This document shows, piece by piece, positions 1-25,888 of a DNA stretch of 64,000 bases. Every line of letters begins with the position of its first letter. Position 1 is the stretch's first letter. A program made the translations under genes and the position numbers. Below the pieces are notes generated by a model, which was not told the DNA's origin, did no database searches, and saw only the letters and a program-made list of their open reading frames with translations. The stretch lies in the IMG/VR virus record IMGVR_UViG_3300033997_000243, positions 186,001 to 250,000 of that record; one strand, given 5' to 3'.

Positions 1-230
1 CCGCTATCTATCTTCTGACTTTCTTGAGTTCTTTTCGGTAATAACAATCGATAGTTTTTGTTATCACACAATTGAATAGATGCAAGTTCAAATATATTAC
101 TGTAGCTAAATTTACCTTCGCTAACATTCATACTGTATACCAGTACGGAAATTTTTTGAGAGCAAACATCTACAATAATCTTTGGATAGTCATCTTCCTT
201 GTATGGGTTCTTATCGTACTCAAAGTGCAT
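1..230 (-). CDS. hypothetical protein, runs off the window edge (MHFEYDKNPY...)
   Basis: ATG at 230 with a GAGGG SD; frame open to the window start. Confidence 0.5.
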   Translation of the reverse strand, partial: MHFEYDKNPYKEDDYPKIIVDVCSQKISVLVYSMNVSEGKFSYSNIFELASIQLCDNKNYRLLLPKRTQESQKIDS

Positions 231-270
231 TAACTTTCCCTCTGAATATAACCTAAGCTTTTACACTCGC

Positions 271-732
271 TTACTGTTGGTTCGTACCTTCAACACCGCG
301 CTGTTTGCGATCTTGTGTTCGTGCATCCAACCAATGCAATGCACTTACAATATGTTGCAGCGCTTGTTCATTGGAATTACAAGCGAACGGGCCAGCTTGA
401 AAACCACGAAGTCGGTGAGCGCATATTACCAAAAGATCTTCCATTTGAATTCCATTGACACCATGTTCGTTGATTGGGCCATTTTGGAAATTAATGGCGG
501 CAAGACAAATACTTTGTTCACCGTTAAAAGCGCTTACACTGTAAACATGATTTGCATTACCGTGAGTTGGTAAATCGTCAGCAGTTACAATTGTGTACTC
601 TGTTTTACGAATAGCTAAAACAGCTTGCTTTTGTTCGGCATCGTAATCTTCCATTGCCTGTGTAATCTTTTCAGCAGTAACTTCACCATCTACTGCAATG
701 AAAATAGTTCCTTTTGTTGGATCATCACTCAT
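271..732 (-). CDS. tad1: Tad1-family anti-Thoeris (gcADPR / cyclic nucleotide sponge) protein
   Basis: GNANHVY, INFQNG and DLLVICAHRLRGFQAGPF..N..AL.H...AL.W...R..DR..RGVEGTN match the Tad1 consensus recalled from Clostridium phage Tad1. Confidence 0.8.
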   Translation of the reverse strand: MSDDPTKGTIFIAVDGEVTAEKITQAMEDYDAEQKQAVLAIRKTEYTIVTADDLPTHGNANHVYSVSAFNGEQSICLAAINFQNGPINEHGVNGIQMEDLLVICAHRLRGFQAGPFACNSNEQALQHIVSALHWLDARTQDRKQRGVEGTNQQ

Positions 733-1166
733 TCACTGACCTCGACTTCTTGCAATTGCTCTAAGGGTTCAAAAGTTGATTTGACTCCCATAAGCTTGCG
801 TACTTGATCCATTGCCATTTCACCACGAACAGGTGTAACGCTTAAATACAAATAGTTGTATTCAGTGTGATCTGGATCTTCTGGATTTACATACTGAAGA
901 AGTTCACCAGCTTTCCATTGATAATGATACATGCCAACGACTTTTGTTTCTTCCACTGGATTGCTACTGTTTGAAATAGCATTTACTACACGTTCAAACA
1001 GGTCGGCTGAATAACTGGCCTTTGGGTTGTTCAACCACAAACACTTTTTGTCGAAGTCAACATAAGCCGTGAAATCCGGTAAACTGTGGAGACAGTGAAC
1101 TTCTACAGTCCATCCAGCAGATTCTAAAGTTTCTTTGTGTTGCTCAATAATGCCTGAGTATGACAT
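729..1166 (-). CDS. hypothetical protein
   Basis: ORF with GAAGGA SD; overlaps the downstream start. Confidence 0.6.
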   Translation of the reverse strand: MSYSGIIEQHKETLESAGWTVEVHCLHSLPDFTAYVDFDKKCLWLNNPKASYSADLFERVVNAISNSSNPVEETKVVGMYHYQWKAGELLQYVNPEDPDHTEYNYLYLSVTPVRGEMAMDQVRKLMGVKSTFEPLEQLQEVEVSE

Positions 1167-1199
1167 TTGATTTTCCTTCTAATTGGTGGGTTAAAGTTA

Positions 1200-1991
1200 T
1201 TAAATTTTACAGGCTCCGCCTTCGCAATCTTCCATATCTTCATCTTGTGTTTGAATTTCGATTAAAACATCTGGTATTTCCAGAGAATCAAAATCAACTA
1301 AGGCAAAGTCATCGTCTTTACCTGCTTCAGCACTTAAAGGCAATGTTAATACAAGAACTGGTTGATTCATGTTCACATAAATGCCGAATTGTGCATTTAA
1401 GCATGAGTGAGTTTCACCATGATCGCTGACACTGTAACTACCTTCACGGGTAAATGTTCCTAAAGGAGTATCAGCTGGAAAAATGAAGATTTTGTTTCTC
1501 AGATTTTGCATGTGTTTGGGAAATAAGCCGTCTGTTACTAAAGACACTTCAATATCTTTAATTTTCAAATCAGCTATTTCACCATTCTGCACTAACAAAT
1601 GTTGGTTTTTCGGTTGAAAATGGTTAAACCAAGATTCTTGTTCACTGATAGATGAAAATCCAAGTTCACCAGCCAGCATAATAAATTCTACGCTGTCCTC
1701 AAAATCATCTACTGATTTAATAGCTTCGTAAATAGCATCAGGGGTGAATTGTTTTTCAAGATTAAATTGGTGACTCGCACCATCCAATGTCCAAGACATT
1801 ACTCGATTTTCAAATCCAACCCCAATTTGCTTGTCAGCTTCTGCCTCAAGATGTTCATTCGACATAACTATAGAATCACTTCTCGTTGTAATAAAGCCGT
1901 TCAGCTTAACTCGCTTAAAGAATCGGCGCAACAAATTTGCAGGTTGATCCAAGTTATTCAATACGTTAGTTAAAACAGTAGTTTTGTCCAT
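1200..1991 (-). CDS. hypothetical protein, possibly a degenerate major-capsid-like paralogue, with an NrdA-like C-terminal CEGGACKI tail
   Basis: GAGGTG SD; acidic tail ending DCEGGACKI; weak capsid-like motifs. Confidence 0.5.
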   Translation of the reverse strand: MDKTTVLTNVLNNLDQPANLLRRFFKRVKLNGFITTRSDSIVMSNEHLEAEADKQIGVGFENRVMSWTLDGASHQFNLEKQFTPDAIYEAIKSVDDFEDSVEFIMLAGELGFSSISEQESWFNHFQPKNQHLLVQNGEIADLKIKDIEVSLVTDGLFPKHMQNLRNKIFIFPADTPLGTFTREGSYSVSDHGETHSCLNAQFGIYVNMNQPVLVLTLPLSAEAGKDDDFALVDFDSLEIPDVLIEIQTQDEDMEDCEGGACKI

Positions 1992-2003
1992 TTCGCACCT
2001 CAG

Positions 2004-2360
2004 TTACAGAAAATTTCTGGAATTATTTAAAGGGAATTCTGTTTCTTCTTCGAGATTTTTAGCCGAAGTTATTCGTAGACCACTCATAGGTGAACGTCCA
2101 TTGGCATTCATATAGCGAGTATCTACATGATAATAAACTCTGTTTTCTGATACACGGTCTAAGGCTAAGAATATGGCAAGCACTGACACTAATTCAGGAT
2201 CTTGAGCAAGTTTTTCGTTAATACCGTTAAGTAATTCATCCAGCTTGTCTTTATTAAGTGGAAGGTTCGCATCAAAAACTTCTTGTAATTTTGAGTCAAA
2301 CTCGTATTGAAGATCTCTGTAATCTTCCAGAAAAGCAAACACTTGTTGATGGTTAGACAT
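2004..2360 (-). CDS. hypothetical protein
   Basis: ORF in a packed operon, AGGA SD. Confidence 0.6.
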   Translation of the reverse strand: MSNHQQVFAFLEDYRDLQYEFDSKLQEVFDANLPLNKDKLDELLNGINEKLAQDPELVSVLAIFLALDRVSENRVYYHVDTRYMNANGRSPMSGLRITSAKNLEEETEFPLNNSRNFL

Positions 2361-2368
2361 TTTTCTTC

Positions 2369-2719
2369 CTAAGATTCCTTTAATAAATCTTGTTGTCCTG
2401 AAATACCCTTTAGTAACTGTTCAGTTATCAAAGCGTTCGGTCTAGATCGAGCGTACATAAGTTCGACCAGATAATCATGCAGCGATTTCTCTGGTAAGCC
2501 GTGTTGATCATTTTCACTATCCCAAATAACCTTTCTATTAAAGGATATATAAAATGTCGATTCCACGTACTCAAGTGATAGTAGAGAATATGATTTCCAA
2601 TGATCTTTTGTTTGACCTGATTTTGCAAAACCATCAACTAATTGTTCTATATTGTTATTTATTCTGTCAATGACAGATACAAGTTCTTGCATAAGATTGA
2701 TTGCAGTTTGATTCATCAT
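2369..2719 (-). CDS. hypothetical protein
   Basis: ORF in a packed operon, AAGGA SD. Confidence 0.6.
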   Translation of the reverse strand: MMNQTAINLMQELVSVIDRINNNIEQLVDGFAKSGQTKDHWKSYSLLSLEYVESTFYISFNRKVIWDSENDQHGLPEKSLHDYLVELMYARSRPNALITEQLLKGISGQQDLLKES

Positions 2720-2728
2720 AATATTCCT

Positions 2729-3139
2729 TTAATAGATAAATAAGGGAAGCCAAATATCTGTGAACACTTTTTTAAAATGAGAAGAATGTTTTTCAGCGAA
2801 ACCTTCAAGGAATTCTTGTCGCTGTGCGATAGTTCCATCTGTAGGATCTGCAAATATAGAAACCAAATTACGAGGAAAAGGCTTACCGACCAATTGAGTA
2901 TGTTTTCGATCTAAGTAAGCGTAAATTTGCTTGTTTAGATTTCTACGTTGTTTTCTACGTTGATAAGTAGTCGGAAGTATTTCTTTTTCTTTTGGAAAAC
3001 GCACTAAACAGATATGAAGAGTTTCTGGATGTTTTGCCAAAATTTCTGGATCGACAAGACCTGCGTAGTAGAATACAGATTGTCCTTGCGCCGGAAAATG
3101 CACTTCGAGTGTTCTATCGTTAAGTTTTTTAAATTCCAT
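2729..3139 (-). CDS. hypothetical protein
   Basis: ORF in a packed operon, GGAG SD. Confidence 0.6.
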   Translation of the reverse strand: MEFKKLNDRTLEVHFPAQGQSVFYYAGLVDPEILAKHPETLHICLVRFPKEKEILPTTYQRRKQRRNLNKQIYAYLDRKHTQLVGKPFPRNLVSIFADPTDGTIAQRQEFLEGFAEKHSSHFKKVFTDIWLPLFIY

Positions 3140-3142
3140 TAA

Positions 3143-3493
3143 TTACTCCAGAGTAGAATTGATTTTTCTGTCGAGTGCTTCACGACTTATACCAACAGTA
3201 ATCAACATGTTCAAAACAGTTTCTGCGTGTGGCGCACTACAAACAGATTGCTCAAGATACTGTAATTCTTTTCGCATCTTTTCAATCAAACTTGTTGTGT
3301 ACTTAATGCTGACCATGTTTGCTTCAAAGTTGTTAGGTTTGTACGCTTGTAGCTGACTGACTGGTGGAGGAGTTTTACCTGCACGTATATAACGCTTTGA
3401 CCAAGATTCATATTCTTCAAGCAGCAGTCCAAAAGCTGTTGCCATGTGTTCTTCAGTAAACTGAACGTGTTTTTGTTTTGGATCTGCCGCCAT
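3143..3493 (-). CDS. hypothetical protein (start MAADP)
   Basis: GAGGA SD precedes the ATG at 3493. Confidence 0.6.
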   Translation of the reverse strand: MAADPKQKHVQFTEEHMATAFGLLLEEYESWSKRYIRAGKTPPPVSQLQAYKPNNFEANMVSIKYTTSLIEKMRKELQYLEQSVCSAPHAETVLNMLITVGISREALDRKINSTLE

Positions 3494-3504
3494 CTTATTT
3501 CCTC

Positions 3505-3603
3505 TTAAGACCAATCATCACCTTGACTTTCACGTTTATGTGTTTCGTCATCAGAATATTTTTTGTTGTCAGGATCTGGATATTCTTCATTCCGTTGGCA
3601 CAT
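3505..3603 (-). CDS. small acidic peptide, 32 aa (MCQRNEEYPDPD...)
   Basis: fills the gap between neighbours; GAGG SD; below the ORF-track cutoff. Confidence 0.3.
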   Translation of the reverse strand: MCQRNEEYPDPDNKKYSDDETHKRESQGDDWS

Positions 3604-4081
3604 TACGTTTTTCCTCGAAATCTGATGCCTTTCGTAAAATAATATCCCGCAGTTGAGAATTCAGTAGATAAAGATCTACATATTCTTGCGTATCTTTAAG
3701 ACGTTCACCTCGATTAGATCTCCAATCTTTCATTGGGCCACGATCAACAATTCCGATAAAGTTATCAACCGTATTGTGCATTCTTTCTATGGCCGCATGA
3801 GATACTGGAATTGGCTTACCTATAAAATCAGTTAAGGCTTTTCTTACTTCCAACGCAATAACTTCTTGTGAATTCTCAAACATTTCAAGAAGTTGTTCAC
3901 GAGTTTGTGGAGAAAGAATATTGACGTTAAGGTTTAATGCTTTACTTTCAGCAGACTTTACGGCTTGATCGCAAATTGTTTGTGTTTCTTGCAACAAGCT
4001 ATTGCCATACATCATAGGGTTCAAAGCAATTGACTTTAAATTCTTTTGAATGATCTCTAAAGCAGTTAAAATGTTTTCCAT
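3587..4081 (-). CDS. hypothetical phage protein
   Basis: ORF in the operon; DW...GERLKDT.EY motif. Confidence 0.6.
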   Translation of the reverse strand: MENILTALEIIQKNLKSIALNPMMYGNSLLQETQTICDQAVKSAESKALNLNVNILSPQTREQLLEMFENSQEVIALEVRKALTDFIGKPIPVSHAAIERMHNTVDNFIGIVDRGPMKDWRSNRGERLKDTQEYVDLYLLNSQLRDIILRKASDFEEKRNVPTE

Positions 4082-4082
4082 G

Positions 4083-5030
4083 CTACACCTTAAAATAATC
4101 TTCGGTAAAGATACGTTTATCCATCGGTAATCTTAATTCACCAATCAACTGACCTAGCAAAGAACTATTAACGATTAGCAAGTTTGGCTGGATATTAGGA
4201 TCTTGCTCAACTGTATAACGCTGTGCGTAATAAGCTTTCAGCATTACAATTCGTTGCAATAAATAAGGAATTTTGAAAGTGCTAAGTTGTTTAGGGCTAA
4301 AAGTGAAACGGCCATTGCACTTATTTATTAAATCTTGTGTAATGGTTGGAGGATCTATGCTGTCCTCAAATACCGAATCTGGAAAGAAAGCGGTTTCAGG
4401 GTCGAACATAGTAGAATCTTCTGATTGTTGACCATCTTCAAAATCGTTAACAAACTTTACACCAAGATTATTGGATTTTAGTGAGGGAGCAAATCGAGTC
4501 CCAAACTTAAAATTTTGATTTATGTAGTTGTGTATGCGGAATTCCAAATACTCCTTGTACAACCGCTCGTCCATAACAACCTTTACTTTTGGATGATCCA
4601 ACTTTTTTAAGGTTTCAAACAAGGAAAGTAAATACGCATGGCGGCCATGAACGAAACTTTCACTCACGAATATAAATGTTTGTGAGTTTTTTTCGGTAAG
4701 CAGTTGAATTTTACCTACTGCCTCCGTTTTAAATTCTTCAATCAGTTCATTGCTGTGACTAAAGGGAACTTCAACTTCCAAAAAATTCTTTGAACCTTCA
4801 GTTCCAAATAAATGAGTAAGGTCGTAGGAATGATCATATTGAATAGATGACTCTGAATCAACTTTCATAAGAACAGCAGCAACACTCATTAAGTCACCGT
4901 ACTTACTAAGTGCTTCAACGGAATTTGGTGTAAATGCTTCGGATGCGGCTGAAGCATTATTCACTAAACGATCTAAATAAGCATCACGCATAAAGCGCAA
5001 TTCAGGTAAAGACATTGGAATAATATTCAT
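4083..5030 (-). CDS. hypothetical protein
   Basis: 315-aa ORF in a packed operon. Confidence 0.65.
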   Translation of the reverse strand: MNIIPMSLPELRFMRDAYLDRLVNNASAASEAFTPNSVEALSKYGDLMSVAAVLMKVDSESSIQYDHSYDLTHLFGTEGSKNFLEVEVPFSHSNELIEEFKTEAVGKIQLLTEKNSQTFIFVSESFVHGRHAYLLSLFETLKKLDHPKVKVVMDERLYKEYLEFRIHNYINQNFKFGTRFAPSLKSNNLGVKFVNDFEDGQQSEDSTMFDPETAFFPDSVFEDSIDPPTITQDLINKCNGRFTFSPKQLSTFKIPYLLQRIVMLKAYYAQRYTVEQDPNIQPNLLIVNSSLLGQLIGELRLPMDKRIFTEDYFKV

Positions 5031-5032
5031 TG

Positions 5033-5473
5033 TTAGTTCTCCATTTGTATTTCGATGAATTCTGCTTGCATTCCAAGATTGGCAAGTATAATACTAACCT
5101 GTGTAATGTTTTCACTGGAAATAAATAAGTCACACAACTGGCCAGCTTGATCAGAAGTTTTTATAATGGCTTCCAATTGCTTAATAGCTAACTCAGGTTC
5201 TTGAAAGATTTCAGGATGTACAATAACAAAATCGAAGGGCTTAACATCTTCAGAGTGCAATCCAAGTGGAAGAAAACTGTCTACCATATACTGACTTCCA
5301 ATTTTAATCAGTGCGTTAGCAGCATCGAACAAGTTTGTGTATAGTAAACAATTAGTCCAATTTCTTCCCATAGCCATTGCAATTTGATTTGCCTCTAAGC
5401 CAGCAAACCAAGACATTTGACTTACGGCCAGTGGAAAGAAAGATTCTGGTGTAGTGGAGTGACGTATGATCAT
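5033..5473 (-). CDS. hypothetical protein
   Basis: ORF with ATGA overlap to the upstream gene. Confidence 0.6.
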   Translation of the reverse strand: MIIRHSTTPESFFPLAVSQMSWFAGLEANQIAMAMGRNWTNCLLYTNLFDAANALIKIGSQYMVDSFLPLGLHSEDVKPFDFVIVHPEIFQEPELAIKQLEAIIKTSDQAGQLCDLFISSENITQVSIILANLGMQAEFIEIQMEN

Positions 5474-6255
5474 TTAGATCTCTTTCCCTTATTTTTAGGT
5501 TCAATGTAGGTAACAAAATATTTTGAATTGTCACCAGTATAAAGCAGTGGTACGTTCAACCAATCACAAATGATTTTGCCGAGCTCTTGACCAGTAAGAG
5601 CAATTTCGCAGCCACTGTACATTTTGTTAGCAGCTTTTATGTCTGATCCAGTTGTTATTTTAAACGGAAGATCTTTTTGTGATAATACACGAGTAGGGCG
5701 TTCGCTGTATGGAGTTAGACGAATATCCATTAACTTGGCAATATCATGCAAACACAAATCTAGCATATCGCGCACAACCAACTTTCCAACAAAGAAAGAA
5801 CGGCCCCAATGGAATTCATCCATTAAAGTTTTGTAAAGCAAGTAGCGTTCATCTTTTTGATTCTTTACAAAATCAGGTGGGATAACCACTACTTGTCCAC
5901 GGCCTTTTGAAAAAGTTTCTTTGTAGTCTTGGTTTGTGTATACTGAGCTGGTTTGCAGCATTCCACCTTCAGTCATAATTTGCTGATGAATTATTTTACA
6001 TTCACGACTTGGATATAAAAAAGATTCCACAGAATGAAATTCGGCAATAAAACGAAGAAATACAACTTTCTTACCATTCTTATCGAAGTTGTGGCCGTAA
6101 GCTTTTCCAACTTTACCCCAACGATCTGATTTTGTTGTTATCACACAAATTGTATCGACCGGATTACCAGTCATTAATATGTTGTCGGTTAATTTGTTTT
6201 GCGTGGCAGCCTTGATAAATTCTTTGTATTCAGCTTTTTTAGATAGACTGATCAA
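5470..6255 (-). CDS. hypothetical protein
   Basis: TTG start with a strong GGAGGT SD. Confidence 0.6.
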   Translation of the reverse strand: MISLSKKAEYKEFIKAATQNKLTDNILMTGNPVDTICVITTKSDRWGKVGKAYGHNFDKNGKKVVFLRFIAEFHSVESFLYPSRECKIIHQQIMTEGGMLQTSSVYTNQDYKETFSKGRGQVVVIPPDFVKNQKDERYLLYKTLMDEFHWGRSFFVGKLVVRDMLDLCLHDIAKLMDIRLTPYSERPTRVLSQKDLPFKITTGSDIKAANKMYSGCEIALTGQELGKIICDWLNVPLLYTGDNSKYFVTYIEPKNKGKRSK

Positions 6256-6272
6256 AAACTACCTCCAATTGG

Positions 6273-6294
6273 AAAAGGTGGGACAAAGCCCACC
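6273..6294 (-). terminator. intrinsic terminator after thyA
   Basis: GGTGGG/CCCACC stem followed by a U-tract on the minus strand. Confidence 0.6.
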
Positions 6295-6301
6295 ACAAAT
6301 C

Positions 6302-7561
6302 TTAAATTGCTACATCAGCTGGAATATGACCGCAGTGTTGATAACCTACTACGCGATAGTTTTGTTTACCAAGACCACGCAGATCAGTTTTTTGTTGAGG
6401 GCCAACACCAAAAGTAATTAACAGCGGCAGCGATTTAGAGTTTTCCAGATTGCTACCTTGTGTTTTGAATGCTTCGATATGGTTTTTGTATATGTGAGTA
6501 TCACCAACAAAAATATCCAGTTTACGAGGAATCATTCCGGTGACGGCAGCAACATAGCCATTTAGCATTGCATAGCTTGCTATATTAAATGGAGCGCCCA
6601 AAAATAAATCTTGACTGCGCTGGTACATGGCTAAACTTAATTCGCGTTTAGTCTCAACAAGACCGCTCATTGAAGCCAGAATTTTTAGCAAACTTACTTC
6701 GGACATTTCATACAATTCATTTTCAGTATATTCTACTGGAAAACCGTTGATTGTTGTTTGACCGTCAATTGTGTAAACATTATGAATTGCACGTTCTCCC
6801 ATAATGTTTTCGCCAGCATCGGCAGAACCAAATTGGAAAATTGTGTGACAGGCAGGTAATGCTTGCTTACCAATTTCAACCTGATCTTTTGGTGGCAATC
6901 CATCAACAGGAATTACGTTTGGATTCCAAGCATCCACAATAATACGACGACAATCTGGATAGTTCTTTAAACGATAGATCGCGTTTTTGATCTGATCAAA
7001 TTTGCGAATGAAATAATGCGAACGTACTTGAGTAGCAGGGTTATCAAAATACTCGTAAGAATAAGTTGATTGGCCTTGCAAGCGTGAATCGTTTTGATCG
7101 CAAACATCATCTGACAATGAACGTAAGTAATCAAACTTTGTTTCAAAGTAAGGATCTGTTGAGACAACACGATGAATTTCTTCACGACCTCGCCACTGCT
7201 CACCGTATACTGGGCCAAGATCGCCATTAGCATTTGCCCAACCATCCCAAATGTGAACATCTTCATCCAAAAGTTCTTGGATGTTTGTTTTGCCATCTAA
7301 AAACCAATGTAACTCTTTTGCGGTTCCCCTTAAAAACAATTGTTTGGTTGTAGGCATTGGAAAGCCGCTAAACAGATCTAAAGCTAAATGTTCACCAAAA
7401 GTTTTAATGGTGTCTTGCTGAGTTCTGTTAGATGAAGATGTGCCGTTGTTCAGAATTTTTTCGGCAAGAGCTAAAAAGTCAAAGTCAAATTGGTTTGCAG
7501 GAACTGCGTCACCAAATAATGCGTAACCTTGTTTTAATTTTCCAGGTGGAGATTTAGTCAT
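6302..7561 (-). CDS. thyA: thymidylate synthase with two insertions
   Basis: TTK, GDLGPVYGEQWR, RRIIVDAWNP, LPACH (catalytic Cys), YQRSQD.FLG.PFNIASY and GDTHIY motifs. Confidence 0.95.
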   Translation of the reverse strand: MTKSPPGKLKQGYALFGDAVPANQFDFDFLALAEKILNNGTSSSNRTQQDTIKTFGEHLALDLFSGFPMPTTKQLFLRGTAKELHWFLDGKTNIQELLDEDVHIWDGWANANGDLGPVYGEQWRGREEIHRVVSTDPYFETKFDYLRSLSDDVCDQNDSRLQGQSTYSYEYFDNPATQVRSHYFIRKFDQIKNAIYRLKNYPDCRRIIVDAWNPNVIPVDGLPPKDQVEIGKQALPACHTIFQFGSADAGENIMGERAIHNVYTIDGQTTINGFPVEYTENELYEMSEVSLLKILASMSGLVETKRELSLAMYQRSQDLFLGAPFNIASYAMLNGYVAAVTGMIPRKLDIFVGDTHIYKNHIEAFKTQGSNLENSKSLPLLITFGVGPQQKTDLRGLGKQNYRVVGYQHCGHIPADVAI

Positions 7562-7571
7562 CGAAATTTCC

Positions 7572-7988
7572 TTAGTTGTTTTGAAGAATAAGATTGCGAA
7601 TTACGTCATCGCTTTTTAAAATGTTTTGGCGAACTGATTCCATGCAACCTGTAACCGTTGTTTCGAGTGCTTGCAAACTTTGTTTTATTGAAAGCGAATC
7701 AAATATGAGGACATTGATTTCTCTTTCAAGATCGTCCAGAATATCATCAGGATTAGTAGAGGATTCTAAAGCATGTTGGACAATCTGAATTATTTTTGAC
7801 TGAAGTTCAGTGTTGCAGTCTGCTTCCTGCATTATGGATTCTGGAAGTGGAACCATAACACAAGAATCTATTTTGGTAATTGTGTCTGTAAAATAATACT
7901 GAACAAATGGGCCTTCTGACAATACAGCAATTTCTAAATTGTCCTGTAATAAAGAAATGGACACAAGATAAGGTGTTAGTTTAACCAT
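7572..7988 (-). CDS. hypothetical protein
   Basis: AGGAG SD; upstream CTGTAAAT motif. Confidence 0.65.
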   Translation of the reverse strand: MVKLTPYLVSISLLQDNLEIAVLSEGPFVQYYFTDTITKIDSCVMVPLPESIMQEADCNTELQSKIIQIVQHALESSTNPDDILDDLEREINVLIFDSLSIKQSLQALETTVTGCMESVRQNILKSDDVIRNLILQNN

Positions 7989-8025
7989 TAGTTTTCTCCT
8001 GTATTAACCTTGGATTTACAGTATG
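7986..8025. repeat. 40-bp direct repeat, copy 1 (RBS plus putative promoter)
   Basis: cattagttttctcct-N10-tggatttacagtatg, repeated 460 bp downstream. Confidence 0.9.
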
Positions 8026-14663: not shown

Positions 14664-16127
14664 ATGGTACGTGCAACAAATTTAAGTAAAGCCGTTGGGT
14701 TCCAACAACACGTAAATGCCATACTAGAAGATTTCAAAAAAGAATATGTGTGGGCCGATAAAGAAAAAAGTAGTTTAGCAATTTTCCTTGTAGATGCTTT
14801 GGCTGGTATAAGTGAAGTTGGACAAACCCACACAATGTTTGCGCTGCGTGAAGCATTTTTAAGAAAGGCCCGAAGAAATAGTAGCATTCTTGCTAACGTA
14901 AAGTTCTTGGGCGTAGAGTTATCAAGAAAAAGTGGATCAGCTACTTTAGCAAACTTACGCAATAACAGTGATACTTCTATACCAGTCGGAGCTTTCACAC
15001 AATTCTCTATTGGTGGCAGAAATTTCTACAACAGTCAAGGTTTCGTACTTGACGCAAAATCAAATAAAAGCGTTGTGCTGAAACAAGGCACGGTGGCAGA
15101 GAAGAATTTCAATTTAGCCAATTACGATCTTACATTTCCCGAAATATATTTAGGTGTTCCAAACTTCATTGTTTCATCAGAAGATCTTCAGGTTCGTGTA
15201 ATAGAATCGAATGGTGTAAGTACGTTGTGGACAAAACATACTGACACACTCTACGAAATGCGCCCTACCTCCAACAGTTATATTGAAAGCACAACTGAAA
15301 ATGGTGATGTTAGTTTTCTGTTTGGTAATGGTACTTATGGACGTAAACTTCCGCCAGATGCAACATTAAATGTTCGTTACATTATTAATGAAGGTGCTGT
15401 TGGTAATATCGGAAGTCCAGGTTCTCGCGTTACCGTAAATACAATTGGTGCTATAAGCGGTGTAACTGAAGAAGCAGCTGTTGGTGGATCTGATCAAATT
15501 GATTCAAATTTTTATAAATTGTATGGATCAAGTTTGTTTGAATCTCGTGGAACATTAATTCGTCAAGCGCATTGGGATGCACTGCAAAGTAGTTATCCTG
15601 ATATAGCGGATTTAGTTGTTCAGGGACAAAGAGAATTGGCTCCAGACGATCCAAGCTGGATGACTACAGTACGTCTTTGTGTGCTGCCAAAAAATAGTAG
15701 CAGTTGGGGCGGTTCAAACCCTAACCCTCAATCTGCTCAGTGGTCGCGCTTTTTAAGTTATGTGCAAGCTCGTTGTGGCAAACTTACTTTGGTGCCACAC
15801 AATCCAGAAAAAATTCTGATAGATGTATTGGTTGATGTTTATATATTTGACGACCAAGATGCCAGTTTAATGGAAGCTACTTTAACAGAAGTAGTTAAAA
15901 AGTTTTTCAGTCGTCGTACTGGAATACTTGGCCGCAAATTTGTTCCAAGCAGCGATTTAGGTGACAGCATCAAATATGAAGCTGATGGATCTAAACGCGA
16001 AGGAATAGATTATATTACTATTCTTCAACCAGACAGACCAATAACACCTGATTCTAAAGTTGCGTATGTTACACCACGTTCAATTAAAGTGCGTGTTAAA
16101 TATACTCAACGTAAACGGGATGCGTAA
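14664..16127 (+). CDS. baseplate wedge protein (gp6 / baseplate J-like)
   Basis: EAFL..ARR.SSI, FG.G.YG..LP, Y....G..GN and GGSD motifs; synteny. Confidence 0.85.
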   Translation: MVRATNLSKAVGFQQHVNAILEDFKKEYVWADKEKSSLAIFLVDALAGISEVGQTHTMFALREAFLRKARRNSSILANVKFLGVELSRKSGSATLANLRNNSDTSIPVGAFTQFSIGGRNFYNSQGFVLDAKSNKSVVLKQGTVAEKNFNLANYDLTFPEIYLGVPNFIVSSEDLQVRVIESNGVSTLWTKHTDTLYEMRPTSNSYIESTTENGDVSFLFGNGTYGRKLPPDATLNVRYIINEGAVGNIGSPGSRVTVNTIGAISGVTEEAAVGGSDQIDSNFYKLYGSSLFESRGTLIRQAHWDALQSSYPDIADLVVQGQRELAPDDPSWMTTVRLCVLPKNSSSWGGSNPNPQSAQWSRFLSYVQARCGKLTLVPHNPEKILIDVLVDVYIFDDQDASLMEATLTEVVKKFFSRRTGILGRKFVPSSDLGDSIKYEADGSKREGIDYITILQPDRPITPDSKVAYVTPRSIKVRVKYTQRKRDA

Positions 16128-19100
16128 TGAAAAGATTAAATGACTTAATGGTAGGTATTCTGAAAGAAAATCCTTTAATGGAAAGTTCACACAGAATAAT
16201 CGATGAATATTTTGTTCGTAATGTAACAAAATTTACTGAACAATTAGAAAGCATACGTACCATAACTCAAGAGACTCCGCAAGAAATTGTGGATGACAGC
16301 ATTCGTCAAATTGGTTTTGATATTCCAAGTTGGATAATGAGAACAAACGGTGAAAATATTCGCCGTTGTTTTTATCACTTGACTCAAGTTTATCAAATTA
16401 ATGGAACTCCTAATTACCCTAAATTTTTAGAGTTCCTTTTAGATCGTGGAATGCGTGTTGTAAATTTATATACGCAAGACTACGTTGAATTTTTCCCACA
16501 ACCGCTAGGTCGTTTAGTTAGTGAAGGTGGTTCTTGGTTTTTAACCACTCACGTAGATCTTGCGGTAATGGCAAATGGAATTCTTGGTCACTATCCTCTG
16601 GAATTGAATGAGCAAGATATTGCTTGGATCAAAACCAACTTAAACTATGAAGCGGCTGAACAGTGGCAAAAAGATGACATCGACTTTGATATTGATCGAA
16701 TGGTGTCTGCTGGAACAGTGTATGGTGTTAATGATGCACTGTATGCTTACATGGTGTTGGATAAGCGAATCATTGATTTGTTTTATCAGTTTGCTCCAAT
16801 AGAAGAAGTGGTACGTGGTATTTACATGACCATTACTGCTCAAGCTAACTTGTACATAACTGGAAGTTTGATTGAAGAACAAATTGATTTCATAGAACTA
16901 AATGGCCCATATCCAACGCAATCAGTTCTTGAATTAAATAGCATGTTAAGTGCAGGACAAGAATATCCTGTATATGGCCGAGTTGTCTGGTCTAATGGAA
17001 TGCAAACTCCAGAAACAGCGGTTATCACTTGGGCAGACCACGGCTATACAATAACCGAAGAAAACAAAATAATATTCGATGAAGTTGAAGCACAATTACG
17101 CAAGGATGTAATCGTCGAATACAAAATTTTAGGTGTTGTTGAAACAACAAGAATAACTTTGTACCAAGGTGATGTCGAATTAGTTCCTTCATCTCTTGTT
17201 ATAAAGGGGCCGAATGTTGTTGCCGAAAATAACACTGTTGCTTTTAACATCATTGGGGATTTTCGTGGGCCGCAAGGTGATGCGAAATTCCGTGAGATCT
17301 ATGATGTAGAAAACGTAAAATTGACTACAAATAGTTCAGATGTAATCATCGAAGGTTTTGATCTTACTGTTAAAAGAATCTTTGAAGATAAAAACATAGT
17401 TGTTCAAGCAGAGTATGAAACAAGTGAAGGTACAAAACTTTATCAGACATTTCCGCTGGTACTTCGTGCTCTACCTAAGCCAATTATTCCAATAGGTGTT
17501 GAATTTGCATTTACTCAAGTTATTTATAACTCTGAAGGTATTATTGTAAACGAAACTCCTCACATTGGCGATTTATTGCAAAACAATTATTACCGTATCA
17601 AAACTACTTTGATCTATAGCGACAATAGTTTAGTTCCAACCGACATGGAAGTAAATTGTTCTAGCTTAGCTATTGTTGTTGAAGCAGACAGAACATTTTT
17701 TGCAAGCGTTGTGAATAGTGACTATGAAAACATTTTTAGTGTTAAGTACACTGAAGGTGAGGAAGTAGTGACGGCTTCTGTCAGCAAGCTTGTTGTTTTT
17801 CCAAAAATAGTTTTGAATAGTTTGGAAATTGTTGGGCCAGATGTTTTGATGGAAGGCAAAACAGAAAACTATTCTGTTCTTGCTCACTGGAGTAATGGCC
17901 AAGTAAGTTCGGTTCCAGAAGCTCAATTGGTAAGTCGTGAAGCATTATTAGGTTCCGAATTTTTATATCCAGTGACTATTGATCGCGGCAGTGTAACTGC
18001 TCCAGTATTAGGAATGACAGCACGATCTCAGTTAACGGCCAGCGTTCAGCGTTATACAGATGGGCATTGGGTTGAAGTTACAAAACTTCTTACTATTAAG
18101 AATAATGATCGTATTGCATCTTCAATAGCAACCATCATGGCAGATCAGGTAACGGAAGGAAACAGAATAGCAATAAACTTCTATGTTACATGGACAGACG
18201 ACAAAGTAACACAAGTTATGCCAACTGCCGTGCGTTTAATAAAACAGGAGAATGGTGTTATTCACAGTGAGGCAGTGCGTGTAGATCCAGATGTTGATAC
18301 AGAAATTGTAGAAACTGGATTTGGCCCACTTCGCATTAAAATGCACCCAACTCAAACTTTTATTGAAACTGAAACTGGATTAGAATGCAGATCTTTAATG
18401 ATCGAGTATGAAGAAAGCGATACGAGTCTTAATGGTTTGTTTAGCATGGAATTCGATTATGATGATCCGTATTCTGCAAATTTAATTTCGGCAAATCGTT
18501 TATTTACAACCGCAGAAAAATTCGTAGGAAGTGAAAGTGTTACTATTCACGTACCTGACGAAATGGCTGAAGGTTCACGACACTTTGCTAAGGCCGTAGT
18601 TCGTTTTGAAAATGGTCTGGATAAAGAAGTTGAAGCCAATTGGAGTGTAGAAGATATTGAAGGTGAGACAGATGATGTTGGTGCTGATGTAAGCGTTAAC
18701 ACATATACCTTACAAAAAATAGTTTATAGCTTAATTGCTTTAGATGAAACAACGCTAATGGATATGTCATTGTCTAACCAAGATTTGACTGCGTTCCAAA
18801 TACGCAATCTTATAAATGGAGATTCAATATTTGCTGAAATGTCAAATCAACCGATTCCAGGACAAACTTGGCCACAAAAACTTTTAATTTTGTTCGCTCA
18901 ATATCCTGAACCTCTTGCCCGTTGTTTAATTCAAACTCGTTTTATAGCCGAAGATGAATTATTTGTATTACGTTGCGGTTTCTTTGCAAAACAAGATGCA
19001 CGTACAATCAAAATCATTAACCGTCCGGTTGAGCCAGATACTCCAATTTTAAGTTGGTACATAACTGGCCCAGTCGAAATAGAAGCGAATCTTTACAACT

Positions 19101-20782
19101 TTTATTCTTACGGTTTAAGTGTTCAATATGCTGATAATGGTGTTGAGTATTTAGTAAGTAATGATTGGGAAGTTGAATTGTATTCCGATGAAACTTTTGA
19201 CCAACGGCGTGAATTGATTCGCACCATTGTATTGCGTGACGGTGACGGAATACTTCCAATGGATAACGATGGAAGTGGCCGTAAAAAAGATGTTGATGAA
19301 CTAACTGCGGAAGAACTGTTAGAGGTTTTACCAACAAGCAGCGTTGTTGACATCGATCAAAATGGTTACTTGTATCCACGTTTAAATGAAAATGCGCGTA
19401 TTGTAGTTACAGCCGTTTATAATGATGGACAACAGCAATTCAGAGAAAATCTTCCAGTTTACATTCGCAAACAAAATACTAGATTGCAGAAAATAGAGGT
19501 AGCTTTAGTTGGGCCAACTGGATCAATAACATTTGACTTTAAAGACAAATTGTTAGATGAACCAAACGCTTGGTCAAACTTGAGTTTGGATGGAGTTGTT
19601 TATTATCAATTCCGTGCTTATTTAACGCGATTTGGAGATCCTGCTCAATACGAATTGGTTGAAAATCTTTTCTGGAAAGCTGAACCTGTAGGCAGTGGCG
19701 TAAGCTTTGACGAGCAAAGCGGCCGACTTTATATTCTTCAACAAACTAACGACAGTGATGTAACAATTGTTGCTTCTTATGAAGAAGAATTTAGAGAAAG
19801 CGAAACAAGTTCAACAGTATTTTTGGAGAGTATAAAGTCATATTCTCTTGTAAAAATAACTGCGACCAAAGCGCTAGATGTTATTGATATTCTTGGTAGT
19901 ACGTTTACAACAAGTGATACAACTTTTTATCCATCTTACCAAGTTTCTCGCCGTGACGGATCTTTGGCAAGTGTTGATGTTGTTTCCTTATCAATAGTTG
20001 AAGCACCTTTAGATATTTCCATAAGTATTGACGGTAAGGGAATAGTAATTCCAAAACGATCAACGGATATAATCATTAAGATTCGTGCTACAGCTGTTGA
20101 AGGTTTACGTACAATCTACAAGGATTTTACGGTAACTATTTTGGCAAGCTTTGTTCCGTTAGAACTACACATAAACAGTAATCCAGCTGGTATTCGTGAT
20201 AATGGAGAATTTTACCTAAAAGCATTTTTAGAAATGCGTGATGGATCTACTTATGATGCAACAACAGATTCTTACTGGCTGTTGGAAACAAAATTGGCAG
20301 GTCTTGAATTAGGTAATAGAACTGGCTTATTGAAAGTTCCTTATGTTGATAAAGACACTGAAATAACCTTTAAAGTTGTGTACACTAGAAACGAGATCGT
20401 GTTTGAAAAAACTCACACAATGATCATTCAATCTAGTTATCCAATTTACTGGGAAGATCCAGTGGCTGCAATCAACGCAACTTATTTCCAGAATGTCATT
20501 GGAAGTGACGAATTCAAAAGATTATTAAGTACAACAGGCGGAAGATTCACTTCATATCCAGCTGCTGCTGAGTATCTTTACTTTGCACATCCGAAAAGTT
20601 TTGGTTTAGCTACGTTCGCCATTATTCCAAGTACAACTGGAGCAATCAATTGGGGCAACATGCAGACACCTGTAGAAGTAACGCGCACCTATATTAATGG
20701 TGTGACTGAACCTTGGTTGATTTATCGTACAGTCAATCGCGGTTTTACTTTAGGTGAATTCAGTGTGGTATATGGGCAGTAA
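16127..20782 (+). CDS. large baseplate wedge protein (gp7-like N-terminus) with tandem Ig-like repeats
   Basis: follows the gp6-like gene; repeated L.I.GP..V.E strands; 1551 aa. Confidence 0.7.
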   Translation: MKRLNDLMVGILKENPLMESSHRIIDEYFVRNVTKFTEQLESIRTITQETPQEIVDDSIRQIGFDIPSWIMRTNGENIRRCFYHLTQVYQINGTPNYPKFLEFLLDRGMRVVNLYTQDYVEFFPQPLGRLVSEGGSWFLTTHVDLAVMANGILGHYPLELNEQDIAWIKTNLNYEAAEQWQKDDIDFDIDRMVSAGTVYGVNDALYAYMVLDKRIIDLFYQFAPIEEVVRGIYMTITAQANLYITGSLIEEQIDFIELNGPYPTQSVLELNSMLSAGQEYPVYGRVVWSNGMQTPETAVITWADHGYTITEENKIIFDEVEAQLRKDVIVEYKILGVVETTRITLYQGDVELVPSSLVIKGPNVVAENNTVAFNIIGDFRGPQGDAKFREIYDVENVKLTTNSSDVIIEGFDLTVKRIFEDKNIVVQAEYETSEGTKLYQTFPLVLRALPKPIIPIGVEFAFTQVIYNSEGIIVNETPHIGDLLQNNYYRIKTTLIYSDNSLVPTDMEVNCSSLAIVVEADRTFFASVVNSDYENIFSVKYTEGEEVVTASVSKLVVFPKIVLNSLEIVGPDVLMEGKTENYSVLAHWSNGQVSSVPEAQLVSREALLGSEFLYPVTIDRGSVTAPVLGMTARSQLTASVQRYTDGHWVEVTKLLTIKNNDRIASSIATIMADQVTEGNRIAINFYVTWTDDKVTQVMPTAVRLIKQENGVIHSEAVRVDPDVDTEIVETGFGPLRIKMHPTQTFIETETGLECRSLMIEYEESDTSLNGLFSMEFDYDDPYSANLISANRLFTTAEKFVGSESVTIHVPDEMAEGSRHFAKAVVRFENGLDKEVEANWSVEDIEGETDDVGADVSVNTYTLQKIVYSLIALDETTLMDMSLSNQDLTAFQIRNLINGDSIFAEMSNQPIPGQTWPQKLLILFAQYPEPLARCLIQTRFIAEDELFVLRCGFFAKQDARTIKIINRPVEPDTPILSWYITGPVEIEANLYNFYSYGLSVQYADNGVEYLVSNDWEVELYSDETFDQRRELIRTIVLRDGDGILPMDNDGSGRKKDVDELTAEELLEVLPTSSVVDIDQNGYLYPRLNENARIVVTAVYNDGQQQFRENLPVYIRKQNTRLQKIEVALVGPTGSITFDFKDKLLDEPNAWSNLSLDGVVYYQFRAYLTRFGDPAQYELVENLFWKAEPVGSGVSFDEQSGRLYILQQTNDSDVTIVASYEEEFRESETSSTVFLESIKSYSLVKITATKALDVIDILGSTFTTSDTTFYPSYQVSRRDGSLASVDVVSLSIVEAPLDISISIDGKGIVIPKRSTDIIIKIRATAVEGLRTIYKDFTVTILASFVPLELHINSNPAGIRDNGEFYLKAFLEMRDGSTYDATTDSYWLLETKLAGLELGNRTGLLKVPYVDKDTEITFKVVYTRNEIVFEKTHTMIIQSSYPIYWEDPVAAINATYFQNVIGSDEFKRLLSTTGGRFTSYPAAAEYLYFAHPKSFGLATFAIIPSTTGAINWGNMQTPVEVTRTYINGVTEPWLIYRTVNRGFTLGEFSVVYGQ

Positions 20783-20794
20783 TACTGCCCTTTT
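20774..20794 (+). terminator. intrinsic terminator
   Basis: GGGCAGT-AAT-ACTGCCC followed by TTTT. Confidence 0.7.
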
Positions 20795-20834
20795 ACATAA
20801 TTTATAAGCATGTGGTTTTACGGGAAATATAAAA

Positions 20835-23189: not shown

Positions 23190-23201
23190 GGTCGGTGCGG
23201 T

Positions 23202-24725: not shown

Positions 24726-24736
24726 GTAGGTATTTT

Positions 24737-25381
24737 ATGTTGACGAAAGTTCCAACTAAATTAATTTCAGCGCCTCAAGGAACAAACGGTCAAAGTCTTG
24801 TTGTTCAGGATAAAAGAATAACAGCTCAATCTACTGCAACTCAAACAGTTTCACCTATAGAAGATTGGTTTTATGATGCAAGCGTTGGTGTTCTCACAAT
24901 TCGTTTGTTGAATGGAACAACTCAAACTTTAGGTGGATTTCCAATATTATCTGATATTCCTGAAGGCCCACAAGGAGCACAAGGAGAACCAGGAATTGAT
25001 GGAAAAGATGGTCGTGATGGTCGTGATGGTCGTGATGGCGAAGCTGGTTGTGTAGGTGCAGCTGGTGAAAAAGGTGATGACGGTGATGATGGCCGTGACG
25101 GATTAGAAGGGCCAGTTGGCCCACCAGGTATTCAAGGATGTGAAGGCCCAAGAGGAAAACGTGGGCCAAAAGGTGAAGATGGAGATCAAGGCCCACCTGG
25201 AAAACAAGGTCTTCCAGGAATTGAAGGGCCACCTGGAAAAATGGGAAAACAAGGGCCACCTGGAAGAATAAATATTATTGTAAGTGAAACTGATCCAGGT
25301 CCAAGTTTAGGTAATGGTGGAATTTGGGTTAATCCTTTAATTGGTCAGATAGATGATGATACTGATCAATTTTTTACGTAA
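24737..25381 (+). CDS. collagen-like fibre protein
   Basis: about 33 Gly-X-Y triplets; (GGTCGTGAT)3 DNA repeat; C-terminal DPG...G.IWV. Confidence 0.85.
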   Translation: MLTKVPTKLISAPQGTNGQSLVVQDKRITAQSTATQTVSPIEDWFYDASVGVLTIRLLNGTTQTLGGFPILSDIPEGPQGAQGEPGIDGKDGRDGRDGRDGEAGCVGAAGEKGDDGDDGRDGLEGPVGPPGIQGCEGPRGKRGPKGEDGDQGPPGKQGLPGIEGPPGKMGKQGPPGRINIIVSETDPGPSLGNGGIWVNPLIGQIDDDTDQFFT

Positions 25382-25393
25382 GGAATTTTTAGC

Positions 25394-25888
25394 ATGAGTG
25401 GTTTAACAAAATTAAACTTATCTATGGTAAGTCCACCACTTCAAAATGGCGGAGTTATTGCGTCAGGCCAAAGTCTCACTGTAGATCCAAAAACAATAGA
25501 TCTTTCTGAATTTAGTGGCTACTATGATCGTACACAAGGAATACTAACTTTAAATATTCCTACGATTGGAAAAATTAATATTGGAAATTTTCCAACATCT
25601 GCGGATATTGGTACAGGACGCACAGGGCCAAGTGGTCGGGATGGTGTAGCAGGTGTTGATGGTTTAATCGGTGAAACTGGTCAAAAAGGTTTGCAAGGTT
25701 GTCGTGGGCCAGAAGGCCCACAAGGTCGTCAAGGTGAACGTGGGCCGCGAGGTCTAACTGGGCCGCAAGGTGAACAAGGTATTCAAGGTATTCAAGGCAA
25801 TGACGGTCGTGATGGACGAGTTTTAATTTTTGTTCAAAGTGAAGATCCCGGAAGCGTTGGGGCTGGTGCGCTCTGGGTACGGCCCTAG
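25394..25888 (+). CDS. collagen-like fibre protein
   Basis: about 22 Gly-X-Y triplets; paralogous N- and C-terminal caps. Confidence 0.85.
   Translation: MSGLTKLNLSMVSPPLQNGGVIASGQSLTVDPKTIDLSEFSGYYDRTQGILTLNIPTIGKINIGNFPTSADIGTGRTGPSGRDGVAGVDGLIGETGQKGLQGCRGPEGPQGRQGERGPRGLTGPQGEQGIQGIQGNDGRDGRVLIFVQSEDPGSVGAGALWVRP

What the first reader, a model, noticed from the sequence alone, without database searches (positions are those of the whole stretch)
1200..1262. Ribonucleotide-reductase-type redox tail (DCEGGACKI) on a non-RNR protein
Seen: an acidic linker ending CEGGACKI. Known: E. coli NrdA ends DDGCESGACKI, the Cys pair that shuttles electrons from Trx/Grx. The rest of the 263-aa protein has no RNR motifs. 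Inference: a captured tail that recruits or sponges thioredoxin/glutaredoxin, or supplies the tail in trans to a tail-less phage NrdA.
Basis: partly seen in the sequence, partly recalled or inferred. Interest (0 to 1): 0.6.

Follow-up and report, generated by a model that had tools for sequence, protein, structure and literature searches.

The report
Portable RNR redox tail in phages
A jumbo-phage protein ends in an exact copy of the electron-shuttling tail of bacterial ribonucleotide reductase, and that tail proves to be a portable 40-residue module that many reductase-less phages, and bacteria such as Neisseria, also carry as a tiny stand-alone gene of unknown function.

Summary
The 263-aa ORF at window 1200..1991 (-) ends in CEGGACKI, the native C-terminus of NrdA in many Gammaproteobacteria (E. 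coli: CESGACKI). The tail is invariant in all fused homologues (55-62% identical overall), with synonymous codon changes.

The main result is that the last ~40 residues are a fused copy of a free-standing mini-protein. In a syntenic relative, a tail-less homologue of the N-domain and a 45-aa mini-protein are separate genes. The mini-protein family has an acidic/hydrophobic stretch, an acidic linker and C-x-x-G-A-C-K-I-stop. It has over 300 sequence clusters, all labelled hypothetical. It occurs in jumbo, N4-like and podophages, and in chromosomes of Neisseria/Eikenella (between iscS and iscU), Moraxella and marine gammaproteobacteria. It is fused to at least five unrelated phage domains.

None of 56 carrier contigs (39 near-complete) encodes an RNR large subunit; none of those tested encodes class III RNR, Trx or Grx. 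The idea of a tail supplied to a tail-less phage NrdA is therefore refuted here.

Best reading: a detached NrdA tail acting on the host Trx/Grx-class Ia RNR circuit. Whether it helps or blocks is unresolved. Function is inferred, not shown. The N-domain may have an HK97/encapsulin-like fold (weak).

The parts
1200..1991 (-). Whole gene P0001, 263 aa. It is a fusion of a lineage-specific N-domain and an RNR-tail mini-protein module.
   Evidence: ORF list and translation. Full-length fused homologues P0002 and P0003, and fragment P0004, come from other samples.
1326..1991 (-). N-domain, residues 1-222. Function is unknown. Invariant residues include D154, H160, R182 and C197. The fold may be HK97/encapsulin-like.
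   Evidence: No family hit. There are only five relatives among 1.8 billion representatives, including the tail-less P0005. Fold searches on a poor model (mean pLDDT 52) return almost only capsid proteins and encapsulins. The second model was unusable.
1401..1403 (-). Codon of Cys197. This is the only cysteine outside the tail, and it is invariant even in the tail-less homologue P0005.
   Evidence: Alignment A2 and cysteine count.
1257..1316 (-). Acidic/hydrophobic stretch, residues 226-245 (contains FDSLEIPD). It is shared with the free mini-proteins and is a presumed docking segment.
   Evidence: Aligns with the free mini-proteins P0035, P0006, P0007 and others. tblastn of P0035 gives 64% identity over 39 aa. 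Resemblance to the NrdB C-terminal motif is suggestive only.
1227..1256 (-). Acidic linker, residues 246-255.
   Evidence: The part IEIQTQ is conserved in fused homologues.
1203..1226 (-). CEGGACKI, residues 256-263. This is an exact copy of the class Ia NrdA C-terminal CX4C redox tail. The stop codon follows at 1200-1202.
   Evidence: It is invariant with synonymous codon variation.

Best explanation
P0001 is a natural gene fusion. A lineage-specific phage domain of about 220 aa (function unknown, possibly an HK97/encapsulin-like fold) has been joined to a module of about 40 aa. In many other phages and in some bacteria that module is a free-standing mini-protein.

The module has three pieces: an acidic/hydrophobic stretch, an acidic linker, and the exact C-terminal C-x-x-G-A-C-K-I dithiol tail of proteobacterial class Ia NrdA. 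The tail always sits at the very C-terminus.

I take the module to be a detached NrdA tail that plugs into the host circuit normally served by the native tail. In that circuit, host thioredoxin or glutaredoxin reduces the Cys pair, and the tail then visits the NrdA active site. The upstream stretch would supply docking.

The carrier phages encode no RNR, Trx or Grx and depend on the host for deoxynucleotides. On that basis I think the module lets the phage tap or tune host RNR turnover. I lean slightly (about 55:45) towards sustaining or hijacking turnover rather than competitively blocking it.

Shown: the sequence identity, its conservation, the fusion/fission relation, the distribution, and the absence of phage RNR, Trx and Grx. 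Inferred: every binding partner and the direction of the effect. The confidence given (0.5) is for the mechanistic reading; the fusion and module anatomy alone I would put at about 0.9.
For: - The tail is identical to native NrdA ends. It is invariant under synonymous change, while the protein as a whole is only 55-58% identical. The neighbouring ThyA-like gene is 90% identical between the same two phages.
- Rosetta stone: in the syntenic locus L193, the tail-less N-domain homologue P0005 and the free mini-protein P0035 are separate genes with one gene between them.
- The free mini-protein family has 302 clusters, and 133 of 143 retrieved small sequences end exactly in CEGGACKI. Variants CAGGACKI, CSGGACKI, CTGGACKI and CESGACKI occur, mirroring the variation at the same two positions in NrdA tails.
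- The module always sits at the C-terminus. It is fused to at least five unrelated domains (P0001; Pylas_064 with Phage_gp49_66; phrog_10453; 296-aa and 360-aa proteins).
- 0 of 56 carrier contigs (39 at least 90% complete) have PF02867. 0 of 26 have NrdD. 0 of 30 have Trx or Grx.
- The genes lie in replication or nucleotide-metabolism neighbourhoods: thymidylate synthase, PolA/5'-3' exonuclease, primase/SSB.
- Some members carry a motif identical to host NrdB C-terminal anchors.
- The alpha and beta tails converge at the alpha active-site entrance, and engineered alpha(1-753)-betaC35 fusions exist.
Against: - There is no experimental or structural evidence of any partner. The complex prediction with E. 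coli NrdA gave no verdict.
- The NrdB-tail likeness is not statistically specific. Column-permuted matrices do as well in 10-15% of trials. For P0001 itself the rigid matrix score is not above its own shuffles.
- Absence of RNR is weak support. The cultured relatives PaBG, NCTB and JA29 lack both RNR and the module, and only about 19% of phage genomes encode RNR.
- Host NrdA already has its own tail, so the benefit of an extra tail is not obvious.
- Bacterial copies sit in isc or redox contexts rather than next to nrdAB.
Confidence: 0.5

Rival explanations
1. Intramolecular redox arm. The N-domain is a cysteine-dependent enzyme (Cys197, with His160, Asp154 and Arg182). Its oxidised cysteine is regenerated by the C-terminal Cys pair, which host Trx/Grx reduces in turn, as in NrdA itself. 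In the L193 lineage the arm would be supplied in trans by the neighbouring mini-protein.
For: P0001 has only three cysteines: the tail pair and Cys197. Cys197 is invariant even in the 24%-identical, tail-less P0005. The domain gene and the mini-protein gene are neighbours in L193 and are fused here.
Against: The mini-protein is widespread, whereas the N-domain has only five relatives in 1.8 billion representatives. The module must therefore have a client other than this domain. It is fused to several unrelated domains. No enzyme fold was recognised; the only fold lead is capsid-like.
Confidence: 0.15
2. Pure Trx/Grx decoy or sponge. The tail titrates or traps host thioredoxin or glutaredoxin, lowering electron supply to host RNR and other clients, or recruiting Trx as a cofactor for a phage protein.
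For: The native tail is a known Grx1 substrate (the 1QFN entry is this peptide). Carriers encode no Trx or Grx of their own. A capsid-like oligomeric scaffold would display many tails (weak).
Against: A reduced dithiol peptide is a poor sink without an oxidant. The conserved upstream stretch is unexplained by a simple redoxin substrate. Starving RNR would hurt phages that have no RNR of their own.
Confidence: 0.15
3. A function unrelated to RNR: a metal- or Fe-S-related Cys-pair peptide, or a sulfur/electron relay for the ISC machinery, whose tail only converges on the NrdA sequence.
For: In Neisseria and Eikenella the mini-protein gene always lies between iscS and iscU, downstream of iscR. 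In Moraxella it lies next to a flavin oxidoreductase and near an Rrf2 regulator. In Thalassolituus it lies downstream of a CysJ-like flavoprotein.
Against: 8-of-8 identity with NrdA tails, including the terminal K-I and the preceding D-D-G, is hard to obtain by convergence. Other bacterial contexts are unrelated to redox. Phage contexts are replication or nucleotide metabolism.
Confidence: 0.1
4. The tail is supplied in trans to a tail-less phage-encoded NrdA.
For: None in this genome.
Against: The complete genome with terminal repeats has no PF02867, PF00268 or PF13597 match. 0 of 56 carrier contigs has an NrdA. Phage NrdA proteins that were found carry their own tail.
Confidence: 0.01
5. RiPP (lanthipeptide-like) precursor. 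The acidic stretch would be a leader and the Cys-containing end the core peptide. UniRef labels two bacterial members 'FxLD family lantipeptide'.
For: The UniRef label appears on two bacterial members. The N-terminal part is acidic and F/L-x-L-D-like.
Against: The NCBIfam models give no hit. There is no Ser or Thr in the putative core. No modification enzymes are in any neighbourhood examined. The module is functional as the end of proteins of 120-360 aa. The tail is identical to the NrdA tail.
Confidence: 0.02

Closest known systems
C-terminal CX4C tail of class Ia RNR alpha subunit (E. coli NrdA C754/C759)
   Same: The last 8 residues are identical to many gammaproteobacterial NrdA ends, and the acidic D/E-D/E-G run precedes them as in NrdA. 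The tail is at the extreme C-terminus and is predicted disordered.
   Different: It is not attached to an RNR barrel. It is encoded as its own mini-gene or fused to unrelated phage domains. The stretch upstream of the last ~11 residues does not resemble the NrdA proximal linker (0 of 39 representatives).
C-terminal anchor of the RNR beta subunit (NrdB ...D-D-F/L-x-D-F-x-L)
   Same: Several mini-proteins carry an identical or near-identical motif upstream of the tail (for example L008, L011, L006/L027). The Moraxella mini-protein resembles its own NrdB end.
   Different: The motif is internal, not C-terminal. The family-wide likeness is not statistically specific (p about 0.1). P0001's own version (FDSLEI) fits only the hydrophobic spacing.
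Small disordered eukaryotic RNR regulators (yeast Sml1, S. pombe Spd1); from established literature, not tested here
   Same: These are small, disordered proteins that act on the large subunit. Sml1 is reported to compete with the R1 C-terminal tail.
   Different: There is no sequence relation. They are eukaryotic and carry no copy of the redox tail. Whether the phage module inhibits at all is unknown.
Redox partners fused to RNR subunits (Grx domain fused to NrdB in Facklamia ignava, PMC6187632) and engineered alpha(1-753)-betaC35 chimeras (PMC11447812, PMC11067019; PDB 8VHU)
   Same: They show that the parts of the RNR electron and radical relay are modular and can be re-wired by fusion, and that the alpha and beta tails meet at the active-site entrance.
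   Different: Those cases add parts to an RNR. Here the tail has left the RNR altogether.
HK97-fold capsid proteins and encapsulin shell proteins
   Same: The only structural matches of the N-domain model: lambda gpE gives Z 9.6 over 136 residues; encapsulins give Z 6-7; Foldseek E-values against viral capsid models go down to 3e-4.
   Different: The model is poor (mean pLDDT 52) and could not be reproduced with P0005. There is no Pfam capsid hit. The gene lies outside the structural module.

Membership tests
Class Ia ribonucleotide reductase alpha subunit (NrdA) | Ten-stranded alpha/beta barrel catalytic domain (Pfam PF02867) with the active-site cysteines | tested here: not met
   P0001 has no Pfam hit at E <= 0.1 and no PDB sequence hit.
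Class Ia ribonucleotide reductase alpha subunit (NrdA) | C-terminal CX4C dithiol tail ending K-I | tested here: met
   Residues 256-263 are identical to native NrdA ends.
RNR-tail mini-protein family (uncharacterised; PHROGs 24014, 14561, 38753, 10239) | C-x-x-G-A-C-K-I followed directly by a stop codon | tested here: met
RNR-tail mini-protein family (uncharacterised; PHROGs 24014, 14561, 38753, 10239) | Acidic/hydrophobic stretch with a conserved Pro, 15-30 residues upstream of the tail, alignable with free members | tested here: met
   Alignment A3. The profile of the fused proteins finds the free proteins P0006 and P0007 at positions 224-262. P0035 is 64% identical over 39 aa.
RNR-tail mini-protein family (uncharacterised; PHROGs 24014, 14561, 38753, 10239) | Free-standing gene of about 35-70 codons | tested here: not met
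   In P0001 the module is fused to a 222-aa domain. The free state is seen in the syntenic locus L193. P0001 is therefore a fusion derivative, not a typical member.
Thioredoxin-fold redoxins (Trx, Grx, NrdH) | Thioredoxin fold with a CxxC active site | tested here: not met
   No PF00085 or PF00462 match in the protein or anywhere in the genome.
HK97-fold capsid / encapsulin shell proteins | HK97 fold (spine helix, P- and A-domains) | tested here: inconclusive
   The top 50 VIA-align rows are all capsid or encapsulin chains, Z 6.0-9.6. Foldseek against BFVD is capsid-dominated. However, the model has mean pLDDT 52, the second model has pLDDT 32, and there is no PF05065 hit.
HK97-fold capsid / encapsulin shell proteins | Assembly into capsomers or shells | not testable with these tools
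   Needs SEC-MALS or electron microscopy of the expressed protein.
FxLD-type lanthipeptide precursors | Match to the curated precursor model, Ser/Thr plus Cys in the core, and a neighbouring lanthionine synthetase | tested here: not met
   No NCBIfam hit. There is no Ser or Thr in the last 9 residues. No such enzymes are in the neighbourhoods examined.
RNR-binding regulators that work like Sml1 | Direct binding to the large subunit with an effect on activity | not testable with these tools
   The single complex prediction gave no verdict. Biochemistry is needed.

The most novel reading that the evidence does not exclude
Phages that lack ribonucleotide reductase, and some bacteria (Neisseria, Eikenella, Moraxella, marine Oceanospirillales), encode a previously undescribed class of mini-proteins that are detached RNR tails. 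Each is an acidic docking stretch followed by the alpha-subunit CX4C-K-I dithiol arm. These would act in trans on class Ia RNR, either as a soluble re-reduction arm or as a tail/beta-anchor competitor. That would make them the first small-protein effectors of bacterial RNR. In P0001 the arm would be displayed on a capsid-like scaffold.
Probability: 0.4. Interest if true: 0.85.

Novelty: new variant of a known kind. Interest (0 to 1): 0.72.

Why it matters
Class Ia RNR is the gateway to DNA precursors. Its C-terminal dithiol tail has always been regarded as an integral part of the enzyme.

This work points to the same tail as a mobile, independently encoded module. It is under strong purifying selection. 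It is spread over many unrelated phage lineages that depend on host RNR. It is also fixed in the chromosomes of bacteria, including Neisseria meningitidis.

That suggests an unrecognised layer of control or exploitation of dNTP synthesis, or of the Trx/Grx network. No small-protein effector of bacterial RNR is known to me, and the literature searches found none.

The idea is directly testable with cultured phages (Klebsiella phages FBKp24, Pylas and Asterion, Erwinia jumbo phages) and standard RNR assays. It also bears on recent findings that several defence systems sense RNR-driven dNTP changes.

Tried and rejected
- Complex prediction of E. coli NrdA with P0001 residues 210-263: no verdict (score 0.01, controls not run). 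This is not evidence either way.
- AF2 model of P0001: mean pLDDT 52. AF2 model of P0005: mean pLDDT 32, unusable.
- ESM Atlas search of the N-domain: nothing usable.
- Pfam, PHROG and NCBIfam on P0001: no hits. Phage database by DNA and by protein: no relatives of the whole protein.
- Test of NrdB-tail mimicry. A position matrix from 32 host NrdB ends beats each mini-protein's own shuffles in 10-11 of 39 representatives. However, a reversed matrix does equally well (the motif is quasi-palindromic), and 10-15% of column-permuted matrices do as well. I therefore do not claim specific beta-tail mimicry.
- Test that the module body copies the NrdA proximal linker: 0 of 39 representatives. Rejected.
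- RNR absence as an argument. Relatives without the module (PaBG, NCTB, JA29) also lack RNR, so I weigh the anticorrelation lightly.
- Literature searches for the tail strings and for phage inhibitors or mimics of RNR found no description of this family.
- Promoter and terminator scan of 1-8000: nothing above shuffles for promoters.
- The PDB profile search's best hit, 1RLR chain A, has a deposited sequence in which beta-peptide residues replace alpha residues 737-746. This is a curiosity, not evidence.
- Read laying was not used. No alternative genetic code was needed.

Full report
**The observation**

The window lies in a complete 319.5-kb jumbo phage genome with terminal repeats and 37.6% G+C. 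It was assembled from subsurface metagenomes. By a tail protein it is distantly related to PaBG-type, Erwinia and Dickeya jumbo phages of Gammaproteobacteria.

The ORF at 1200..1991 on the minus strand encodes 263 aa and ends ...IQTQDEDMEDCEGGACKI. E. coli R1 ends ...DDGCESGACKI (PDB 4R1R and others), and the tail peptide itself is PDB 1QFN chain B. A scan of one genome per bacterial species shows that CEGGACKI-stop is the native end of ~760-aa NrdA proteins in Proteus, Yersinia, Pectobacterium, Shewanella, Pseudoalteromonas, Moritella, Gilliamella and others.

**Conservation**

Word-based and exhaustive profile searches find very few relatives of the whole protein:
- two full-length proteins (P0002, P0003; 58% and 55% identity);
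- one fragment (P0004);
- one distant 231-aa homologue (P0005).

All fused homologues keep D-C-E-G-G-A-C-K-I and the preceding DV.IE.Q.Q block unchanged. At the DNA level every synonymous third position in the tail varies. The nearby ThyA-like gene is 90% identical between the same two phages, whereas P0001 and P0002 are 58% identical. The protein body therefore evolves fast while the tail is frozen.

**What the tail belongs to**

I scanned IMG/VR for the back-translated tail plus a stop codon.
- The CEGGACKI scan gave 31 loci. Only two are real NrdA genes. Most of the rest are ORFs of about 40-130 codons made of an acidic stretch ending in the tail.
- Scans for CESGACKI and for the general C-x-x-G-A-C-K-I-TAA pattern added more free mini-proteins. 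Their tails are CAGGACKI, CSGGACKI, CTGGACKI, CPSGACKI and CVGGACKI. Genuine phage NrdA proteins in the same scans carry their own tails.
- A profile of 20 mini-proteins retrieves 302 clusters, all annotated hypothetical. 133 of 143 retrieved small sequences end exactly in CEGGACKI.
- PHROGs holds them as four families of unknown function.
- Cultured carriers include Klebsiella phages FBKp24, the KpLz group, Pylas and Asterion/Klyazma, Citrobacter CVT22, Erwinia Pecta, the pEa_SNUABM_35 group, and Vibrio 275E43-1.

**P0001 is a fusion**

The distant homologue P0005 lacks the tail. On its contig (L193) it is followed by one 131-aa gene and then by a 45-aa free mini-protein, P0035. P0035 is 64% identical to P0001 residues ~226-263. 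The flanking genes are syntenic with the window's genome. The profile of the fused proteins also hits the free 35-41-aa proteins P0006 and P0007 over positions 224-262.

The last ~40 residues of P0001 are therefore an orthologue of a free-standing gene that has been joined to the upstream domain. The same module is found at the C-terminus of other, unrelated proteins:
- Pylas_064, with a Phage_gp49_66 domain;
- a phrog_10453 protein of 355 aa;
- proteins of 296, 360 and 123 aa.

The module is always C-terminal. This suggests that it needs a free end and otherwise tolerates any cargo.

The genome has no class I/II large subunit, no NrdB, no NrdD, no Trx and no Grx. Across carriers:
- 0 of 56 contigs (39 at least 90% complete) have PF02867;
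- 0 of 26 have NrdD;
- 0 of 30 have Trx or Grx.

Supplying a tail-less phage NrdA is thus excluded, and any partner is a host protein.

A caveat applies. The relatives PaBG, NCTB and JA29 have neither RNR nor the module, and only 128 of 685 phage genomes had RNR in a survey. The anticorrelation is therefore suggestive only.

**The upstream stretch**

Host NrdB proteins end in D-D-F/L-x-D-F-x-L. Several mini-proteins contain the same string, and the Moraxella protein resembles its own NrdB end. The idea of a chimera (beta anchor plus alpha tail) is structurally attractive. Both tails converge at the alpha active-site entrance, and alpha(1-753)-betaC35 fusions have been built.

My controls do not support specificity, however. 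Column-permuted matrices match as well in 10-15% of trials. P0001's own version (FDSLEI) fits only the hydrophobic spacing. The stretch is also not a copy of the NrdA proximal linker. I therefore call it a docking segment of unknown partner. The complex prediction with E. coli NrdA returned no verdict.

**Context**

In phages the gene lies near thymidylate synthase (this lineage, Erwinia-type jumbo phages and others), near PolA and a 5'-3' exonuclease (45-49-kb phages), or near primase/SSB (Pylas).

In bacteria the contexts differ:
- In Neisseria and Eikenella, the 42-48-aa gene is fixed between iscS and iscU, although NrdA there has its own CAGGACKI tail.
- In Moraxella it follows a flavin oxidoreductase, near an Rrf2 regulator.
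- In Thalassolituus it follows a CysJ-like flavoprotein.
- In other marine genomes it follows cvfB.

The redox flavour of some of these contexts favours a working dithiol rather than a mere plug. It also keeps a non-RNR role open.

**The N-domain**

No sequence family matches. The domain has one cysteine (C197), which is invariant along with D154, H160 and R182.

The AF2 model is poor (mean pLDDT 52; a core of residues about 71-130 reaches 76-86). An exhaustive structural search nevertheless returns only HK97-fold capsid proteins and encapsulins in its top 50 rows (Z up to 9.6). Foldseek against viral models is likewise capsid-dominated. A second model built on P0005 failed, so this remains a lead. 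If it is true, the tails could be displayed multivalently.

**Verdict**

- The feature is real and selected.
- It is a fused copy of an undescribed mini-protein family that carries the RNR alpha tail.
- The most likely target is the host Trx/Grx-NrdA relay.
- Whether it feeds or blocks the relay must be settled by the assays listed.
- Literature searches found no description of the family. Recent work shows that defences sense RNR-driven dNTP changes, which gives phages a plausible reason to tune RNR.

Noticed in passing
L068 5063-5191 (Neisseria meningitidis); also L040, L043, L078, L097, L105, L110, L267-L269: A 42-48-aa ORF ending in CEGGACKI lies about 70 bp upstream of iscU, between iscS and iscU, in every Neisseria and Eikenella genome examined. 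Some species have a variable insert before it. It is annotated only as hypothetical, or not at all.
   Followed up: partly
window 6302-7561 (-): A 419-aa thymidylate-synthase-like protein (phrog_160), longer than usual. It is 90% identical in the relative L001. A ThyA-like gene recurs within about 4 kb of the mini-protein in several jumbo-phage lineages. It could be a dUMP or dCMP hydroxymethylase rather than a plain ThyA.
   Followed up: no
window 271-732 (-); L001 11276-12415: The 153-aa ORF (phrog_2428, unknown function) matches only the C-terminal 100 residues of a 379-aa protein in L001 and L002. That protein carries a Pfam Acb2_Tad1_hairpin hit (the anti-CBASS/anti-Thoeris sponge family). 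This hints that the block may be a counter-defence neighbourhood.
   Followed up: partly
window 14664-34226 (+): A large tail/baseplate module: baseplate wedge (487 aa), a 1551-aa tail protein, a 784-aa PaBG-type tail-collar fibre protein, a collagen-like fibre protein (507 aa), and two giant proteins (1119 and 1304 aa) sharing phrog_26008.
   Followed up: no
PDB 1RLR chain A: The deposited sequence of this R1 entry reads beta-peptide residues (DIDDLSNFQL) in place of alpha residues 737-746. By accident this makes it the best PDB sequence match to the mini-protein profile.
   Followed up: no
L241 79-1143; L224 3028-3915; L217 3664-4743; L031 1193-1582: Independent fusions of the same tail module to other phage domains: phrog_10453, two unknown domains, and Phage_gp49_66 in Klebsiella phage Pylas gene 064.
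   Followed up: partly
L158-L161 versus L040, L106, L114: In the three bacterial lineages checked that carry a chromosomal mini-protein, the cell's own NrdA tail reads CAGGACK(I/L), whereas the mini-protein reads CEGGACKI. The two tails in one cell therefore differ at position 2.
   Followed up: no
L049, L089, L095 (Psychrosphaera): The NrdA tails here have unusually long linkers before the Cys pair. In L049 the tail sits in a 23-codon open frame, suggesting a frameshift or a split at the 3' end of nrdA.
   Followed up: no
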